Origin: Octopus bimaculoides
Lineage: Eukaryota
DNA: 57,143 nucleotides
Direction: 5' to 3'
NCBI RefSeq assembly: GCF_001194135.2
Contig: NC_069009.1
Coordinates: 10,456,851-10,513,993 of the forward strand
Below, piece by piece: positions 17,910-42,429 of this stretch (its first letter is position 1; each line of letters begins with the position of its first letter). The translations under genes and the position numbers were made by a program. The notes under the pieces were generated by a model that saw nothing but the letters and a program-made list of their open reading frames with translations, was not told the origin of the DNA and ran no database searches.

Positions 17910-17981
17910 ATATTTGGATGAAAGTAATATCGACATAATTGAAGTAGGGATATTCGATAATCTGACCAGTTTAACATACCT
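17910..17981 (+). CDS. LRR exon L1
   Basis: gttacag| 72 nt |gtaagt, phase 2/2. It encodes YLDESNIDIIEVGIFDNLTSLTY(L), a typical-class 24-aa LRR with the ladder Asn replaced by Ser. Confidence 0.88.
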
Positions 17982-19809
17982 GTAAGTTGTTTAAGTCTTG
18001 TTGATGATATTTCACAGACAATATATTACTAAACATTTAAAATATTCCCATTCTATATAACGTGCCGACTTTGCCTTCCTCAAGATACTCAATCTTTTGC
18101 GATAGAAATATGAGATTTTTGTGTCTGTAAATATGTGAGTGATATATATATATATANNNNNNNNNNNNNNNNNNNNNNNNNNNNNNNNNNNNNNNNNNNN
18201 NNNNNNNNNNNNNNNNNNNNNNNNNNNNNNNNNNNNNNNNNNNNNNNNNNNNNNNNNNNNNNNNNNNNNNNNNNNNNNNNNNNNNNNNNNNNNNNNNNNN
18301 NNNNNNNNNNNNNNNNNNNNNNNNNNNNNNNNNNNNNNNNNNNNNNNNNNNNNNNNNNNNNNNNNNNNNNNNNNNNNNNNNNNNNNNNNNNNNNNNNNNN
18401 NNNNNNNNNNNNNNNNNNNNNNNNNNNNNNNNNNNNNNNNNNNNNNNNNNNNNNNNNNNNNNNNNNNNNNNNNNNNNNNNNNNNNNNNNNNNNNNNNNNN
18501 NNNNNNNNNNNNNNNNNNNNNNNNNNNNNNNNNNNNNNNNNNNNNNNNNNNNNNNNNNNNNNNNNNNNNNNNNNNNNNNNNNNNNNNNNNNNNNNNNNNN
18601 NNNNNNNNNNNNNNNNNNNNNNNNNNNNNNNNNNNNNNNNNNNNNNNNNNNNNNNNNNNNNNNNNNNNNNNNNNNNNNNNNNNNNNNNNNNNNNNNNNNN
18701 NNNNNNNNNNNNNNNNNNNNNNNNNNNNNNNNNNNNNNNNNNNNNNNNNNNNNNNNNNNNNNNNNNNNNNNNNNNNNNNNNNNNNNNNNNNNNNNNNNNN
18801 NNNNNNNNNNNNNNNNNNNNNNNNNNNNNNNNNNNNNNNNNNNNNNNNNNNNNNNNNNNNNNNNNNNNNNNNNNNNNNNNNNNNNNNNNNNNNNNNNNNN
18901 NNNNNNNNNNNNNNNNNNNNNNNNNNNNNNNNNNNNNNNNNNNNNNNNNNNNNNNNNNNNNNNNNNNNNNNNNNNNNNNNNNNNNNNNNNNNNNNNNNNN
19001 NNNNNNNNNNNNNNNNNNNNNNNNNNNNNNNNNNNNNTTCGTCTTCTGCTTTTTTGTAAATTCCAACGCTATGAGTCTTTTTGTATGAGTGAACCTATAG
19101 CATTGTATCTGTTTCTGTTTCTCTATATCATTTACTGTATTCATCTCTAAATCAACGCTGATTGCCATCCATGACTCTCACTTCTAATTGCATATTCAAG
19201 AGTACGTTATGGATATGACTATATTTTAGAGTTGGACCCTTTATCATATTTCTTTTCCACATCATCATCATAGCCATCATCATCATAGCCATCATCATCA
19301 TCAACATCATCATCACACTCATCATCGTCGTCGTCATCATCCTCATCATCATCATCATCATCATTATCATCATCATCCTCATCATCATCATCATCAGTTT
19401 CTCCATTTTCTTCATCGTTTTCTTAATTTACTACTTCTTCCTCTTCTATTTTCTACTTCTTCCATTTCGTGATAGTTTTCTTCCTCTTTTGCTTTTCTTT
19501 CCGAATATGTGCTGTTGCCTTCCTTCTTCCTGTTCCTTTTCTTCTCCTTCTTCTTCTTTATATTCGCAATCGTTTTATTTCTTCCTTCTTCTTTCATCGT
19601 CATAATCTTCCCTCTTATGTCTCTGCTTCTTCTTCGTCTTCTTCGTTCTCTTTTCTTTATTCTTCCAGTAAGAATTTTCTTCAGGTCGAGTAGCCCATCC
19701 CGCTTAAAAGGTCCCTGAATAAGGTTTGTTTAAGGATGTTGTGCAAAACACCCATGTTTCCAANNNNNNNNNNCCCATCTTTTATACCAAGACATTATTA
19801 TTATTATTA

Positions 19810-19880
<71 letters not shown>

Positions 19881-20358
19881 TATTTATTTATTTCTATTAT
19901 TATTATTATTAATTTTGTTGTTCATCTTCTTTATCATTTTCTATATATTCTTCGTCTCTTCCTTCGGTTTCTAATTTATACTTCCTTTTTTCTCTCCGCC
20001 CCTCCTCCTCTTCTCTCTCCTCCTCCTCCACCACTAACTTCTCCTCCTCATCATCATAACATCTTCGTCATCAAAACTACAACCAAATATTTTTCTCCTC
20101 TGCTTCATTATCTTATTCATTACTACGACCATCACATCTTCCACCAGCATTATGCACCTCAACTTCCTCTGCATTATCATCGTAATCATCATCAGCAGCA
20201 ACAACAGCATTATCAACATTATCATCACCATCATCATCGTTACCATCATCATCATGAAACTAATTATTAACCTTTTCTACTTTACATCATTTCTCACAAG
20301 TTATTCTTTAGCTAAAATGTTCTATACAATTCCTCATTATGTCTATTTTATGTTCCAG

Positions 20359-39469: not shown

Positions 39470-41210
39470 ACATTTAAAAAGAGATATAATCAAATTGAAA
39501 AGGAGGCACTAGGAATTATTTTTGCAGTTAAAGAATTCACAGGTTTCTGCAAGGGAGGAGTTTCTTTTATTACTGACGCACCATAGACCTTTGCTGTCGT
39601 TTTATGGATCTAAAAATTGAGTTAGCGACTCATACAGCGAACCGCCTGCAAGTTTGGGAAGTAATATTACTAAATTGTAATTTCAAAACGCAATACATTC
39701 GATCGAAAATATCGGTCACGTGGACTGCCTTTCGAGATTAATTCCAAATATATATAGCACCACTAGAAGTGAAATTAAAAGATTTATGACAAACGCTATT
39801 CAAGAGCTATCAGTGTGGCACAGTATATAAGAATGAAAGATGTAGGTGATGAGTATATTACGAAAACAAAGAGATGCTTTAAAAATAAACAGAATAATTT
39901 GCGACGATATTCAGATGTATACTCAAAGAGTGGTGGTTCCAACGAAAATACAAAGAAGTTATTGCAACAATTTCACAGCGGACATCCTACAATGGCAAAG
40001 ATGAAGGTTCTGATGAGGTGTTATGTCTATTGGCCGTCTATGGACCGAGATATAGAATACTTTGTGAGAACGCGCTGGTGTTGTGCGCTCGCAGCCAAAG
40101 CACTGGTAGTAAAATATCAATGGTGCCCAGAGACGGAGAACCCATTATCTAGGTTGTGAACCAGTAAACAGAGCTTGTTGCCTAATCGTACTACATAGCT
40201 GTAATAAGCGGCTGGATGTTTGAAGGTGCAATAGGTCAACATCTAAGACAGCTATAAAGTTCTTATACGAATTGTTTGCGTGATACAGTGTCCCTGACAC
40301 GCTGATTTCAGAAACCGGAACGCAGTTCTCTGGGTATGAACTGAAGAACTTCTGTAAAAGGTAAGCGATAAAGAATATTTTCTGTCTACTTTACTACCCG
40401 AAGTCAAACCTGCAGATAGAAGGATTTGTGGACACCTGTAAAAGCGCGTTAAGAAAAGTAAGGAAGCACTGACAAATTTCTTAAGAATATACAGAGTAAT
40501 TCCCAATCCAAGTACACATCAGGGGAATCTATTACCCGAGAAAAAAAGATGTAAAGGAAATACGAAAGAGCCAGCGAAATATGTCTAGATACGTGATAAA
40601 GTGCATTTCAAAACCTATAGAAACGCTAAAGATGGCTGGGGAGATGGCCTTGTTACCAGAGAAGATTGGAAGTATGATATAGCTAATTAAATGGTCACAC
40701 GCTGAACATAAGAGACATACAAACTAACTAAAGACGAGGCTTACCGAAGATCAGCAAAAATTCCCATGGATGTATTCTGTGAAAATTTGATGGACCGGTA
40801 CGAAAACTAATAGAGTTCCGTGGAACTAGCATGGTAAAAAGAAAGCAGACTGAACACCTTGAGATAATACCCAAAGGAAAGTGATACTAAAAAGAATAAT
40901 AATATATATAAACAATTTCTTTATTCTGTTGGAACAGGAAATCTCAGAAAGGGAGATGTGCGAGAGAACGACACCCCTTCGCTAGAATGGATTGGACCTC
41001 TACATATAAATAGTAGTGGTCTGACTAAGTGAGCTTGGTCGTGCTAGCTCCACAGTTCGTACGTTGTTAGTTCAAAATTTACAGTTTGAGTTAGCGCGTT
41101 GGATTGTTGGTTCTTAAGATTGTTGTTACATTCCGCGTTGTTACGGAAGTTTGTTTCGATTATATTATTACACTGTTTCAGTGTATTCGTTTATCCATAA
41201 AGATATAACA
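39470..41210 (+). mobile_element. 5'-truncated Ty3/Gypsy LTR retrotransposon relic (RNase H, integrase, PPT, 3' LTR)
   Basis: RNase H reads YNQIEKEALGIIFAVKEF...GHVDCLSRL, and the integrase Zn-finger reads HSGHPTMAKMKVLMRCYVYWPSMDRDIE, followed by a frameshifted core. A PPT agaaagggaga precedes an LTR candidate TGTG...AACA at 40957-41210. Confidence 0.85.
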
Positions 41211-42357
41211 GAAATAAATATCTCAGACCTCTCATGTTAGGAAGGTCGTGAAACGCGTTGTCAGAAAGCAGTTGATTACGTTCCAAGAACAAAACGTTTT
41301 CACAAATATGCAGAATGGCATCAGTCCAGAAAGGCGTTGCTTCACACAGCTACTACAGCATCGTGACTGGGTGGTGAAATAACAGATGAACTTTTCAAAT
41401 ATGGATGATATTTGGTTTATACCATCATCAATATTCCAGCATCAGTCATATTTAACTAGTCTGAAATTAAAACGTTAATGGTTTTAATTTGTTGACAATG
41501 TCTCAGTGTATGTGATGGAATATATATATTATGTCATGGTACTTACGGTCCTTTATTATACTACATAGTACTTTACAAGTTTTCCAATTTTGTAGAATTT
41601 ATATAATATATAAAAAAACTAATGTATTATTTCCAATAAAGTAGAATCCAACTGTCTATGGACTGATACGATGAAGAATATTTTTTCTACAAAATTTTAA
41701 AAATGAAAATTTATTGTTACACATACTTTGAACGTGGCTCTGAAAAAGTAGTGAGCTGTTCTTATGATGAGTGCTTTAATTATTCATGATTTTGTTTCTT
41801 GCAATGTTGTCAATATCTTGCCACTGGAGTATATATGGAAAATAATATTTCTGAGTATCTTGTAAGGCTAGAGATAGGAGTGATGACCCCCCTCCCCTTG
41901 CATATACTATACGGGCACAAACTGTGTGTCGGTATCCAAGTGGCAACAGATGTCTTCCTGAGGCTAAAAGACAGTAACATCGTCCTTGTATACGACTACC
42001 ACATTATGTTGGCAAATAAACTTTAATATTTGTTGATTAAAAATGTGAATGTTATATAAAACACATATTTTACACACAACAAAGTCTCGTTGTTGTTTTG
42101 TTATTCTTATAGCTTACCATCTTCCATTGTTTGCTGCTCGGGTATCACAGAAGATTTCTCTTCTGTTAGGATATCTAAATTATATTAATGGAAACTACTT
42201 CTGTCCAAATTACAGAGATAAAAGTCATAGTGAAATAAACAGCTTTCAGTAAACATGAGATTTTATTTGGTTTGTTTACACAGTATACTGACAGGAGAAA
42301 ACAGACTTATTAATTGTACATATTTTTACTTATAGAATACTTACTTCTTTTTTCCAG

Positions 42358-42429
42358 AAATTTGAGGAACAACCGAATACAAAATTATGAGGATGGCGCG
42401 TTCTTATTCCTTACCAATATTAATTACAT
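42358..42429 (+). CDS. LRR exon L10 (divergent, probably the last repeat)
   Basis: tttttccag| 72 nt |gtatgt, phase 2/2. It encodes NLRNNRIQNYEDGAFLFLTNINY(M/I). Confidence 0.85.

What the first reader, a model, noticed from the sequence alone, without database searches (positions are those of the whole stretch)
17910..42429. Array of ten symmetric one-repeat-per-exon LRR cassettes: candidate variable-receptor system
Seen: ten phase-2/phase-2 exons, with every junction codon rebuilding Leu, so any subset can be spliced in frame. Flanking introns are mutually homologous (the L1, L5, L7, L8 and L9 upstream flanks share gataataatattttacaat...atgttacag, and downstream flanks share gtaagtt...tatttcattga). 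Each exon+intron is therefore a duplication unit. Established: one-LRR-per-exon phase-2 structure is common in animal LRR proteins, and LRR concave faces bind ligands. Inference: alongside SEA-HormR exons, this looks like an LRR-adhesion GPCR whose recognition surface is expanding by exon birth and death. It could be diversified by cassette or mutually exclusive splicing or by copy-number polymorphism, suiting a chemosensory, immune or cell-recognition role. More exons may be hidden in the gaps.
Basis: partly seen in the sequence, partly recalled or inferred. Interest (0 to 1): 0.85.

Follow-up and report, generated by a model that had tools for sequence, protein, structure and literature searches.

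The report
Octopus LRR exon array, adhesion-GPCR family
This is a real row of ten small exons, each coding one leucine-rich repeat of a receptor-type binding domain. [quoted passage not shown]

Summary
Ten + strand exons lie exactly at 17910-42429, all phase 2/2 with AG/GT sites and homologous intron flanks. Nine encode a full LRR (eight of 72 bp, L6 of 69 bp). L5 is a 33-bp remnant with a 39-bp in-frame deletion.

No gap touches an exon, but 11 intronic gaps (3,045 N) split the array into seven exon-bearing contigs. Ten is therefore a minimum, and contig order is unverified.

The family call is supported only through paralogues. An O. bimaculoides locus has SP/LRRNT, six identical-style LRR exons, SEA-like and HormR exons, GAIN, then a GPS+7tm_2 model. 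In the window the SEA-like/HormR exons lie upstream of the array, cannot splice in frame to L1, and form a separate tandem module. No LRRNT, LRRCT, GAIN or 7TM exon was found.

Exon birth and death is supported: L7-L9 are 96% identical with flanks at 78-80%, and L5 is dead.

Cassette splicing is untested here. In an O. sinensis paralogue, annotated isoforms of 525, 501 and 477 aa differ by whole 24-aa repeats. No RNA-pairing signal for mutually exclusive splicing was found.

The 72-bp phase-2 LRR exon is a classical design. Verdict: a new member of a known kind, of moderate interest.

The parts
17910..17981 (+). L1, 72-bp LRR exon, phase 2/2, donor CT (A-type unit)
   Evidence: i-E 1.9e-11
20359..20430 (+). 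L2, 72-bp LRR exon, phase 2/2, donor CT (B-type unit)
22186..22257 (+). L3, 72-bp LRR exon, phase 2/2, donor CT (B-type unit)
28239..28310 (+). L4, 72-bp LRR exon, phase 2/2, donor TT, gtgagt; the most divergent internal unit
31370..31402 (+). L5, 33-bp remnant of an A-type LRR exon. It has a 39-bp in-frame internal deletion. Its splice sites are intact. It codes only LYLNENNIDKH.
32606..32674 (+). L6, 69-bp degenerate LRR exon of 23 residues, phase 2/2 (B-type unit)
   Evidence: weak at protein level
35778..35849 (+). L7, 72-bp LRR exon; a recent tandem duplicate
36248..36319 (+). L8, 72-bp LRR exon, 470 bp after L7 in uninterrupted sequence; 95.8% identical to L7 and L9
37906..37977 (+). L9, 72-bp LRR exon; a recent tandem duplicate
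42358..42429 (+). L10, terminal-type LRR exon (..RIQNYEDGAFLFL..), donor AT gtatgt. It is homologous, with its flanks, to the last LRR exon of paralogues. In those, this exon is followed by an LRRCT exon.
   Evidence: (79% over 209 bp to L001)
17993..18053 (+). Conserved intronic element just 3' of L1
   Evidence: E 1.9e-10, using a profile built only from O. bimaculoides and O. sinensis paralogue introns
20440..20505 (+). Conserved intronic element 3' of L2
   Evidence: E 1.4e-7
22267..22333 (+). Conserved intronic element 3' of L3
   Evidence: E 2.6e-6
31417..31473 (+). Conserved intronic element 3' of L5
   Evidence: E 3.7e-7
32694..32747 (+). Conserved intronic element 3' of L6
   Evidence: E 6.1e-5
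35865..35913 (+). Conserved intronic element 3' of L7
   Evidence: E 4e-4
36335..36390 (+). Conserved intronic element 3' of L8
   Evidence: E 1.6e-7
37987..38044 (+). Conserved intronic element 3' of L9
   Evidence: E 5.7e-8
39779..40156 (+). Retroelement integrase fragment (Integrase_H2C2) inside the L9-L10 intron. It explains part of that intron's 4.4 kb length.
16338..16437 (.). 100-N gap, a probable scaffold join, separating the SEA-like/HormR block from the block that holds the whole LRR array. A second 100-N gap lies at 47878-47977.
2646..6457 (+). Neighbouring module 1, probably not part of the LRR gene as assembled. It comprises the SEA-like second-half exon (~2646-2810) and HormR exons (~5183-5296 and ~6329-6457).
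7163..9368 (+). SEA-like first-half exons (~7163-7270 and ~9315-9368) lying between the two modules
12610..16328 (+). Neighbouring module 2. The SEA-like second-half exon is 12610-12755 (starts in phase 2, ends in phase 1). The HormR exons are 14252-14366 and 16165-16328. The last ends in phase 1 and so is out of frame with L1.
   Evidence: HRM 22.4 bits, below the 26.2 cut-off

Best explanation
The region is the LRR-coding exon array of one member of an octopus-lineage family of LRR-containing adhesion GPCRs. The window shows only part of that gene.

Family architecture, read from paralogues: signal peptide and LRRNT, then n single-LRR exons, then a terminal 'YEDGAFLFL' LRR, then LRRCT, a Cys-rich region, a SEA-like region, HormR, GAIN/GPS and 7TM.

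Each repeat is a self-contained phase-2 exon, nearly always 72 bp. The encoded repeats stack into a curved solenoid whose concave beta-sheet is the ligand-binding face (inferred from LRR structural knowledge).

The array changes length by unequal recombination between the homologous introns that flank each exon.
- Shown: L7, L8 and L9 are recent tandem copies.
- Suggested: L1-L2 and L5-L6 look like a duplicated two-exon block.
- Shown: L5 has been crippled by an internal deletion.

Purifying selection has acted on the young copies: exons are 96% identical, flanks 78-80%. Their few differences are all amino-acid changes. They include three states (R, Y, L) at position 5, the exposed position between L4 and L6 of the repeat.

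Because all exons are symmetric, skipping or swapping them keeps the frame. Annotated isoforms of an O. sinensis paralogue do exactly this. Repeat number and identity are therefore probably varied both in evolution and, to an unknown extent, by splicing.

Whether this particular array is transcribed, and whether it is still joined to cap exons and a 7TM, is not shown.
For: - Exons, phases and splice sites.
- LRR identity.
- Duplication units.
- Exon versus flank conservation in L7-L9: 69/72 against 185-188 of about 236, Fisher p = 1.5e-4 to 3.8e-4.
- Paralogue O. bimaculoides locus L001 has an SP+LRRNT exon and six 72-bp phase-2 LRR exons. Then come Cys-rich, SEA-like, HormR and GAIN exons, and the next gene model is GPS+7tm_2.
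- The L10 unit is 79% identical to L001's last LRR unit, and both share the AT|gtatgtaca donor.
- O. sinensis locus L004 has five exons of the same style.
- Family members XP_052833921.1 and XP_036369232.1 carry about 14 and 12 LRRs followed by LRRCT and a Cys-rich region.
- Isoforms of 525, 501 and 477 aa differ by whole LRR units.
- An octopus-specific adhesion-GPCR expansion, partly LRR-bearing and co-localised, has been described (PMC6408891).
Against: - No SP/LRRNT exon lies upstream of L1, and no LRRCT, Cys-rich, GAIN or 7TM exon lies in the 14.7 kb after L10. About 2.1 kb of that stretch is N, and the rest is rich in transposable elements.
- No database protein with high identity to these exons was found. 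That search appears to drop candidates longer than about 1.75 times the query, so this is weak evidence.
- L5 is dead and L6 is degenerate.
- There is no transcript evidence for this locus.
- The paralogue isoforms are Gnomon predictions. They could partly reflect ambiguous read mapping among near-identical exons.
Confidence: 0.6

Rival explanations
1. The array is a decaying partial duplicate, that is, a gene fragment or pseudogene within a tandem cluster. It would have lost its cap exons and receptor body and would no longer be expressed.
For: - The LRRNT, LRRCT, Cys-rich, GAIN and 7TM exons are all missing.
- L5 is truncated and L6 is degenerate.
- Introns carry transposable-element insertions.
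- No matching protein was found.
- The neighbouring SEA-like/HormR modules also lack a receptor body.
Against: - All nine full exons are open, with intact consensus splice sites.
- The youngest copies are much better conserved than their flanks.
- In paralogues the missing exons lie several kb from the array, so here they could sit in gaps or outside the window.
- In O. sinensis locus L003, a module gene sits inside a large intron of an LRR gene whose other exons lie far away.
Confidence: 0.25
2. As assembled, the window encodes one gene in the order SEA-like/HormR, SEA-like/HormR, then LRR x10.
For: The modules and the array are on the same strand and adjacent.
Against: - The last HormR exon ends in phase 1 while L1 needs phase 2.
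- Paralogues have the opposite order, with LRRs first.
- A 100-N join separates the two blocks.
- In O. sinensis the equivalent module gene is on the strand opposite to the LRR exons.
Confidence: 0.05
3. The exon count is inflated by assembly artefacts, such as gap-flank or haplotype duplicates or misordered contigs.
For: - One clear gap-flank artefact exists elsewhere in the window: 3534-3903 equals 4390-4759 at 100% identity.
- Eleven gaps lie within the array.
- The ten exons sit in seven contigs.
Against: - No two LRR units are identical.
- The closest pairs (L7/L8/L9) differ by 10-16% in their flanks and lie in one uninterrupted contig.
- All ten exons have the same orientation.
- The terminal-type exon is last in the array, as in paralogues.
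Confidence: 0.05
4. The array is a Dscam-like cluster of mutually exclusive exons, governed by competing RNA pairing between a docking site and selector sequences.
For: - The flanks of the exons are similar to one another.
- A roughly 60-nt intronic element follows each internal exon.
- One O. sinensis isoform pair swaps one LRR for another at the same position.
Against: - The window holds no reverse-complement copy of the conserved upstream flank.
- Flank-to-flank duplex energies match shuffled controls, both around one exon and across introns.
- An LRR solenoid needs many repeats at once.
- The paralogue isoforms keep 10-12 repeats.
Confidence: 0.05

Closest known systems
Octopus-specific adhesion-GPCR expansion. 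This is 'group 3' of Ritschard et al. 2019 (PMC6408891). Likely members are O. bimaculoides XP_014782534.1 plus the adjacent GPS/7tm_2 model, O. bimaculoides XP_052833921.1, and O. sinensis XP_036369232.1 to XP_036369238.1.
   Same: - It has 72-bp phase-2 single-LRR exons with the same acceptor and donor flanks.
- It has the same terminal 'YEDGAFLFL' LRR exon with an AT donor.
- It has the same conserved element 3' of each exon.
- SEA-like/HormR exons lie nearby.
- Repeat number varies between members (5, 6, about 12, about 14).
   Different: - The window has no cap, GAIN or 7TM exons.
- Its SEA-like/HormR exons lie upstream of the array rather than downstream.
- It has three very young duplicates and one dead exon.
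- That L001 belongs to 'group 3' is my inference and was not checked against the paper's gene list.
Classical modular LRR genes with one repeat per 72-bp phase-2 exon: the glycoprotein-hormone receptors and LGR4-6, Slit, and brown-alga LRR-ROCO genes (PMC11378527, PMC6642158)
   Same: - Exon size, phase and the repeat register relative to the exon are identical.
- The array evolves by exon duplication and shuffling.
- Exon modularity has been proposed as a substrate for alternative splicing.
   Different: - The receptor body is different: class B2 adhesion type by paralogy, not a rhodopsin-type LGR, a secreted Slit or a ROCO GTPase.
- The lineage is cephalopod.
Vertebrate ADGRA2/ADGRA3 (GPR124/GPR125)
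   Same: An N-terminal LRR domain precedes a HormR domain, a GAIN/GPS domain and a class B2 7TM. This comparison rests on my own knowledge of these proteins.
   Different: - ADGRA proteins have only about four LRRs and an Ig domain.
- They lack a Cys-rich or SEA-like region of the octopus type.
- Orthology was not tested.
NLRP3 and other NLR LRR-exon alternative splicing (PMC6642158)
   Same: Skipping of whole LRR-coding exons stays in frame and changes function.
   Different: NLR exons encode RI-type repeat pairs of a cytosolic sensor. That is a different LRR class and a different exon size.
Lamprey variable lymphocyte receptors, and Dscam exon clusters
   Same: Both achieve diversity from many alternative cassettes that code a binding surface. 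VLRs are LRR-based.
   Different: - VLR cassettes are assembled somatically by a gene-conversion-like process and are not spliced exons.
- Dscam uses mutually exclusive Ig exons with docking/selector RNA pairing.
- Here the cassettes are ordinary exons with consensus splice sites, and no pairing signal was found.

Membership tests
Typical extracellular LRR domain (Pfam LRR_8 / LRR_1) | Tandem repeats of about 24 residues with the LxxLxLxxNxL core | tested here: met
   LRR_8 E = 4.9e-73 with 6 stretches on the nine-exon concatenation. Best PDB matches are IGFALS, LRRC15, TLR3 and LGR4/5.
Typical extracellular LRR domain (Pfam LRR_8 / LRR_1) | Cysteine-rich N-terminal cap (LRRNT) and C-terminal cap (LRRCT) | tested here: not met
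   tblastn with paralogue cap exons and motif scans found none in the sequenced part of the window. They could lie in gaps or outside the window.
One-LRR-per-exon modular LRR genes (72 bp, phase 2) | Each repeat lies on its own exon of 72 bp with phase-2 introns on both sides | tested here: met
   Eight exons are 72 bp, one is 69 bp and one is a 33-bp remnant; all are phase 2/2. The same holds in paralogue loci L001 and L004.
Adhesion GPCR (class B2) | 7tm_2 transmembrane domain | tested here: not met
   No GAIN exon homologue was found in the window, and nothing in the stop-to-stop open reading frame lists resembled a 7TM exon. The 7TM exons themselves were not searched with a 7tm_2 profile. 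The paralogue locus L001 has a GPS+7tm_2 model directly downstream of its LRR exons.
Adhesion GPCR (class B2) | GAIN domain with a GPS autoproteolysis site | tested here: not met
   tblastn with L001 GAIN exon peptides gave no hit in the window.
Adhesion GPCR (class B2) | Homology of the extracellular exons to a bona fide family member | tested here: met
   L10 with its flanks is 79% identical to L001's terminal LRR unit. They share the intronic element. The window's HormR exons are 63-79% identical at protein level to those of L001.
Hormone receptor domain (HRM, PF02793) | A Pfam score above the gathering threshold | tested here: inconclusive
   The spliced HormR exons of module 2 score 22.4 bits (E = 1.7e-4) over profile positions 7-64 of 66. 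The cut-off is 26.2.
SEA domain | A recognisable SEA fold or profile match | tested here: inconclusive
There was no Pfam hit for the 'SEA-like' exons or for P0046. The AlphaFold2 model of P0046 had pLDDT 39 and was unusable.
Dscam-type mutually exclusive exon cluster | Docking site and selector sequences with RNA complementarity | tested here: not met
   The window holds no reverse-complement copy of the conserved flank. Duplex energies equal the shuffled null of -15.1 +/- 4.3 kcal/mol.
Lamprey VLR-type somatic LRR assembly | Cassettes without splice sites flanking an incomplete germline gene, assembled by somatic gene conversion | tested here: not met
   All cassettes have consensus AG/GT splice sites and polypyrimidine tracts. 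Somatic rearrangement itself cannot be tested here.
Alternatively spliced LRR cassette array | Transcripts of this locus that differ in L-exon content | not testable with these tools
   No transcript data are available for the window. Only the paralogue isoforms are known.

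The most novel reading that the evidence does not exclude
Octopus LRR-adhesion-GPCR genes, this array included, may use combinatorial inclusion, skipping and swapping of single-LRR cassette exons to produce many receptor ectodomains from one gene. The conserved ~60-nt element 3' of each internal exon would help control this. 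The result would be a spliced, LRR-based recognition repertoire in arm nerve cord, sucker or skin.
Probability: 0.15. Interest if true: 0.75.

Novelty: new member of a known kind. Interest (0 to 1): 0.4.

Why it matters
If the array is expressed, it is a clean case of a receptor binding surface being remodelled repeat by repeat, through exon duplication and loss, in a gene family specific to octopuses. Ritschard et al. 2019 report that family as co-localised and expressed in axial nerve cord, suckers and skin.

The annotated O. sinensis isoforms differ by whole repeats, and an intronic element is conserved next to every internal LRR exon. Together these make the splicing question directly testable with long-read cDNA.

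Against that, the exon design is a textbook one and the family-level expansion is already published. This copy may also be incomplete. The finding therefore adds a member and two leads, not a new principle.

Tried and rejected
1. My first regex scan for LRR exons missed all the true exons because the pattern was too strict. I replaced it with profile searches.

2. Database search with the concatenated LRRs gave no hit above 47% identity. The tool seems to return only proteins up to about 1.75 times the query length. The longest hits were 374 and 439 aa for queries of 214 and 251 aa. 'Unannotated' therefore cannot be concluded.

I used P0006 instead. Giant LRR proteins dominated that result list, and only P0149 and P0219 were informative.

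4. Exact look-up of ten window ORFs to identify the source genome found nothing. The species remains undetermined. The gap style resembles that of the O. bimaculoides loci I fetched.

5. Look-ups of the P0219 and P0149 loci failed because only the longest isoform of a gene is indexed.

6. I tested for RNA pairing between the flanks of one exon and across introns, and searched for a docking site. None exceeded the shuffled controls.

7. The AlphaFold2 model of P0046, meant to test the SEA label, had pLDDT 39 and was unusable.

8. The Rfam scan of the window found nothing.

9. A weak LRR-like hit at 6254-6289 has no splice sites and was dismissed as chance.

10. Collinearity of the window with O. 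sinensis locus L003 rests on L10 plus repeat-derived matches only, so I do not claim orthology.

Full report
**What the window is**

The window is AT-rich eukaryotic DNA with 20 runs of N. It contains many simple repeats and transposon fragments. The nearest proteins and loci are all from Octopus.

I could not determine the species. Exact look-ups of ten window ORFs found nothing. The mixture of 10-N, 100-N and variable gaps matches the O. bimaculoides GCA_001194135.2 locus I fetched.

**The observation**

| Exon | Coordinates | Length |
|---|---|---|
| L1 | 17910-17981 | 72 bp |
| L2 | 20359-20430 | 72 bp |
| L3 | 22186-22257 | 72 bp |
| L4 | 28239-28310 | 72 bp |
| L5 | 31370-31402 | 33 bp |
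| L6 | 32606-32674 | 69 bp |
| L7 | 35778-35849 | 72 bp |
| L8 | 36248-36319 | 72 bp |
| L9 | 37906-37977 | 72 bp |
| L10 | 42358-42429 | 72 bp |

- All ten are bounded by a pyrimidine-rich acceptor ending in AG and by GT, mostly GTAAGTT.
- All begin with one base and end with two, so all are phase 2/2.
- All lengths are multiples of three.
- Donors end in CT (eight exons), TT (L4) or AT (L10), and acceptors start with A or G. Every junction within the array therefore reads Leu.
- With CT donors this is automatic, because CTN is always Leu.

The exons are far beyond chance:
- DNA profile E-values are 1.7e-20 to 1.9e-15.
- Protein-unit HMM i-E values are 2.6e-13 to 1.1e-9 for eight exons.
- Pfam LRR_8 scores E = 4.9e-73 on the concatenation.
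- PDB matches are led by IGFALS, LRRC15, TLR3 and LGR4/5.

Two exons are not ordinary repeats:
- L5 is an A-type exon with a 39-bp in-frame internal deletion. It leaves eleven codons between intact splice sites.
- L6 is one codon short and scores poorly as an LRR.

No further LRR exon exists in the sequenced DNA on either strand.

**Gaps**

The span holds 11 gaps totalling 3,045 N, not the six listed in the finding.
- None touches an exon and all are intronic. The reading frame depends only on exon phases and is unaffected.
- The ten exons lie in seven contigs.
- Only L4-L5 and L7-L8-L9 are physically contiguous.
- All ten share one orientation, and the terminal-type exon is last, as in paralogues.
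- Units can be as close as 470 bp (L7 to L8). Gaps of 270-881 N could therefore hide exons, and ten is a lower bound.
- Two gaps of exactly 100 N (16338-16437 and 47878-47977) bracket the block that carries the whole array. I read these as scaffold joins (inference).
- The position and orientation of this block relative to the upstream block are therefore the least certain feature of the window.
- One clear assembly artefact exists elsewhere: 3534-3903 is repeated at 100% identity at 4390-4759, across the gap at 3904-4389.

**Duplication units**

Self-BLAST and alignment show that exon plus intron is the unit of duplication.

| Units compared | Identity |
|---|---|
| L7 / L8 / L9 | 84-90% over 270-655 bp |
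| L1, L5 vs L7-L9 | 77-88% |
| L2 / L3 / L6 | 73-78% |

- The order of unit types is A-B-B-C-A-B-A-A-A-terminal. This suggests that an A-B block was duplicated as well as single units.
- The three young exons are 95.8% identical (69/72), while their flanks are 78-80% identical even without the splice-site consensus. Fisher p is 1.5e-4 to 3.8e-4. The exons have thus been under purifying selection, or exon-limited conversion, since they were duplicated.
- Their five inferred substitutions all change amino acids: R/Y/L, P/Q and S/N.
- The three-state codon is position 5, the x between L4 and L6 of LxxLxLxxN. From general LRR structural knowledge this position faces the concave, ligand-binding side.
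- The numbers are too small for a selection test.

**What gene it belongs to**

A search with the concatenated repeats gave nothing above 47% identity. One hit, O. bimaculoides XP_014782534.1 (P0006), shares the distinctive terminal repeat RIQ.YEDGAFLFL with L10.

The P0006 locus, L001, has in order:
1. An SP+LRRNT exon ending in phase 2.
2. Six 72-bp phase-2/2 LRR exons with the same flanks. The last has the same AT|gtatgtaca donor as L10, and the unit is 79% identical over 209 bp.
3. Cys-rich exons.
4. A SEA-like exon.
5. Two HormR exons.
6. GAIN exons.
7. A next gene model that is GPS+7tm_2.

This is one LRR-adhesion-GPCR that the annotation has split into two models.

The full HMMER scan with P0006 added two family members:
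- O. bimaculoides XP_052833921.1 has about 14 LRRs, then LRRCT, a Cys-rich region and the start of GAIN.
- O. sinensis XP_036369232.1 has about 12 LRRs, then LRRCT, a Cys-rich region and the SEA-like first half.

O. sinensis locus L004 has five exons of the same style. Repeat number therefore ranges from 5 to about 14 among paralogues, all built from the same exon type.

Ritschard et al. 2019 (PMC6408891) described an octopus-specific adhesion-GPCR expansion:
- It has about 21-22 sequences, 5 of them with LRRs.
- Tandem co-localisation was reported for the expanded groups, and positive selection for some co-localised genes (their explicit example is group 4).
- The octopus-specific groups are expressed mainly in axial nerve cord, suckers and skin.
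- They removed isoforms before analysis.

That the family studied here is their 'group 3' is my inference.

**The SEA-like/HormR exons in the window**

These exons are real, but they sit upstream of the array. They form a tandem series:
1. SEA-like second half (~2646-2810).
2. HormR (~5183-5296 and ~6329-6457).
3. SEA-like first half (~7163-7270 and ~9315-9368).
4. SEA-like second half (12610-12755).
5. HormR (14252-14366 and 16165-16328).

This is the arrangement of O. sinensis LOC115226217.

- The last HormR exon ends in phase 1, so it cannot be spliced in frame to L1.
- It also ends 9 bp before the 100-N gap.
- L10's AT donor is phase-compatible with an LRRCT exon, as in the paralogues.
- In O. 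sinensis the module gene lies on the strand opposite to two LRR exons. It sits inside the range of a large LRR gene model.

I therefore treat the modules as a neighbouring or nested unit, not as the array's own downstream exons.

HRM is sub-threshold (22.4 bits against 26.2). The SEA label has no support from Pfam or from a structure model.

The window contains no LRRNT, LRRCT, Cys-rich, GAIN or 7TM exon. The array is thus seen without either end of its gene.

**Splicing**

Nothing in the window can show how the exons are used.

A lead comes from the 90%-identity cluster of XP_036369232.1, which holds isoforms X3, X4, X5, X7, X8 and X9.
- Their lengths are 525, 525, 501, 501, 477 and 477 aa, in steps of exactly one 24-residue repeat.
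- Their alignment shows whole LRR units skipped or exchanged near the N-terminal end of the domain. Everything else is identical.
- These are Gnomon models. With near-identical tandem exons, some could be read-mapping artefacts.

I tested for the RNA architecture of mutually exclusive splicing and found none:
- The window holds no reverse-complement copy of the conserved upstream flank.
- Duplex energies between the flanks of one exon, or across introns, are indistinguishable from shuffled controls.

**A conserved intronic element**

- A profile built only from positions +9 to +75 downstream of LRR exons in the O. bimaculoides and O. sinensis loci hits the window eight times, at E = 1.9e-10 to 4e-4.
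- Each hit lies directly after L1, L2, L3, L5, L6, L7, L8 or L9, and there are none elsewhere. L4 is marginal, and L10 has its own conserved flank.
- The reciprocal search behaves the same way.
- Across loci this flank is as conserved as the exons: 61% against 61%, with a random-intron null of 47%.
- In the young duplicates it diverges faster than the exon (75-85% against 96%).

It may be a splicing-regulatory element, or only the slowest-decaying part of the duplication unit. I cannot decide between these.

**Comparison with known systems and verdict**

The 72-bp phase-2 single-LRR exon is the classical design.
- It is found in gonadotropin receptors, Slit and brown-alga ROCO genes. In the ROCO genes, exon shuffling and alternative splicing have already been proposed as a source of receptor diversity (PMC11378527; PMC6642158).
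- The same design is present in every paralogue I examined.
- Exon symmetry is therefore a precondition for variable splicing, not evidence of it.

My verdict:
- The array is a genuine, evolving LRR exon array of the octopus LRR-adhesion-GPCR family.
- Exon birth and death are demonstrated.
- Family membership is supported by paralogy, not by the window's own content.
- Expression and completeness are unproven.
- I rate it a new member of a known kind, with interest 0.4.
- The most novel reading is a spliced LRR repertoire, which I put at about 15% probability.

Noticed in passing
window 3534-3903 and 4390-4759: A 370-bp stretch is repeated at 100% identity on both sides of the gap at 3904-4389. 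This is a gap-flank assembly artefact.
   Followed up: yes
window 2646-16328 (+): A tandem series of SEA-like and HormR exons (two modules, 74-84% identical in DNA). There is no receptor body after them. It resembles O. sinensis LOC115226217 and O. bimaculoides LOC106873593. The function of such module-only genes is unknown.
   Followed up: partly
window 17993-38044 (eight sites), L001 14316-15134, L004 19701-24681: A ~60-nt intronic element (roughly cttgttgatantatttcattgacaatatattactaaata..ttcccat) follows almost every internal LRR exon in three loci from at least two octopus species. Across loci it is as conserved as the exons.
   Followed up: partly
proteins P0219, P0273, P0269, P0271, P0270, P0272 (O. 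sinensis XP_036369232.1 to XP_036369238.1): Annotated isoforms of one paralogue differ only by the presence, absence or exchange of whole 24-residue LRR units. All end within the SEA-like region with no 7TM, so secreted forms may exist.
   Followed up: partly
window 39779-40156 (+); 53531-56097 (+); 48078-49875 (-); 96-1150 (-): Transposable-element fragments. An LTR-retroelement integrase lies in the L9-L10 intron. A non-LTR reverse-transcriptase element is 86% identical to two copies in O. sinensis L004. There is a second RT fragment on the minus strand. Mariner/Mos1-type transposase remains are also present.
   Followed up: partly
window 23308-23695; 13413-13512; 22549-22661 / 22853-22965: Short interspersed repeats. 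The first is 80-93% identical to several copies in the O. bimaculoides and O. sinensis loci. The last pair forms an 84% inverted repeat. None was classified.
   Followed up: no
window 21351-21600 / 21595-21861: A local tandem duplication (89% identity) inside the L2-L3 intron.
   Followed up: no
L001 18647-19225; P0149 residues ~415-510; P0219 residues ~385-478: The Cys-rich region between LRRCT and the SEA-like/GAIN part ends in CC.G..CNKNDF. By eye it resembles a Ly6/uPAR three-finger domain. Pfam gave no hit.
   Followed up: no
tool behaviour: The word-indexed protein search returned no hit longer than about 1.75 times the query length. Long multi-domain proteins containing the query are silently missed.
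   Followed up: partly
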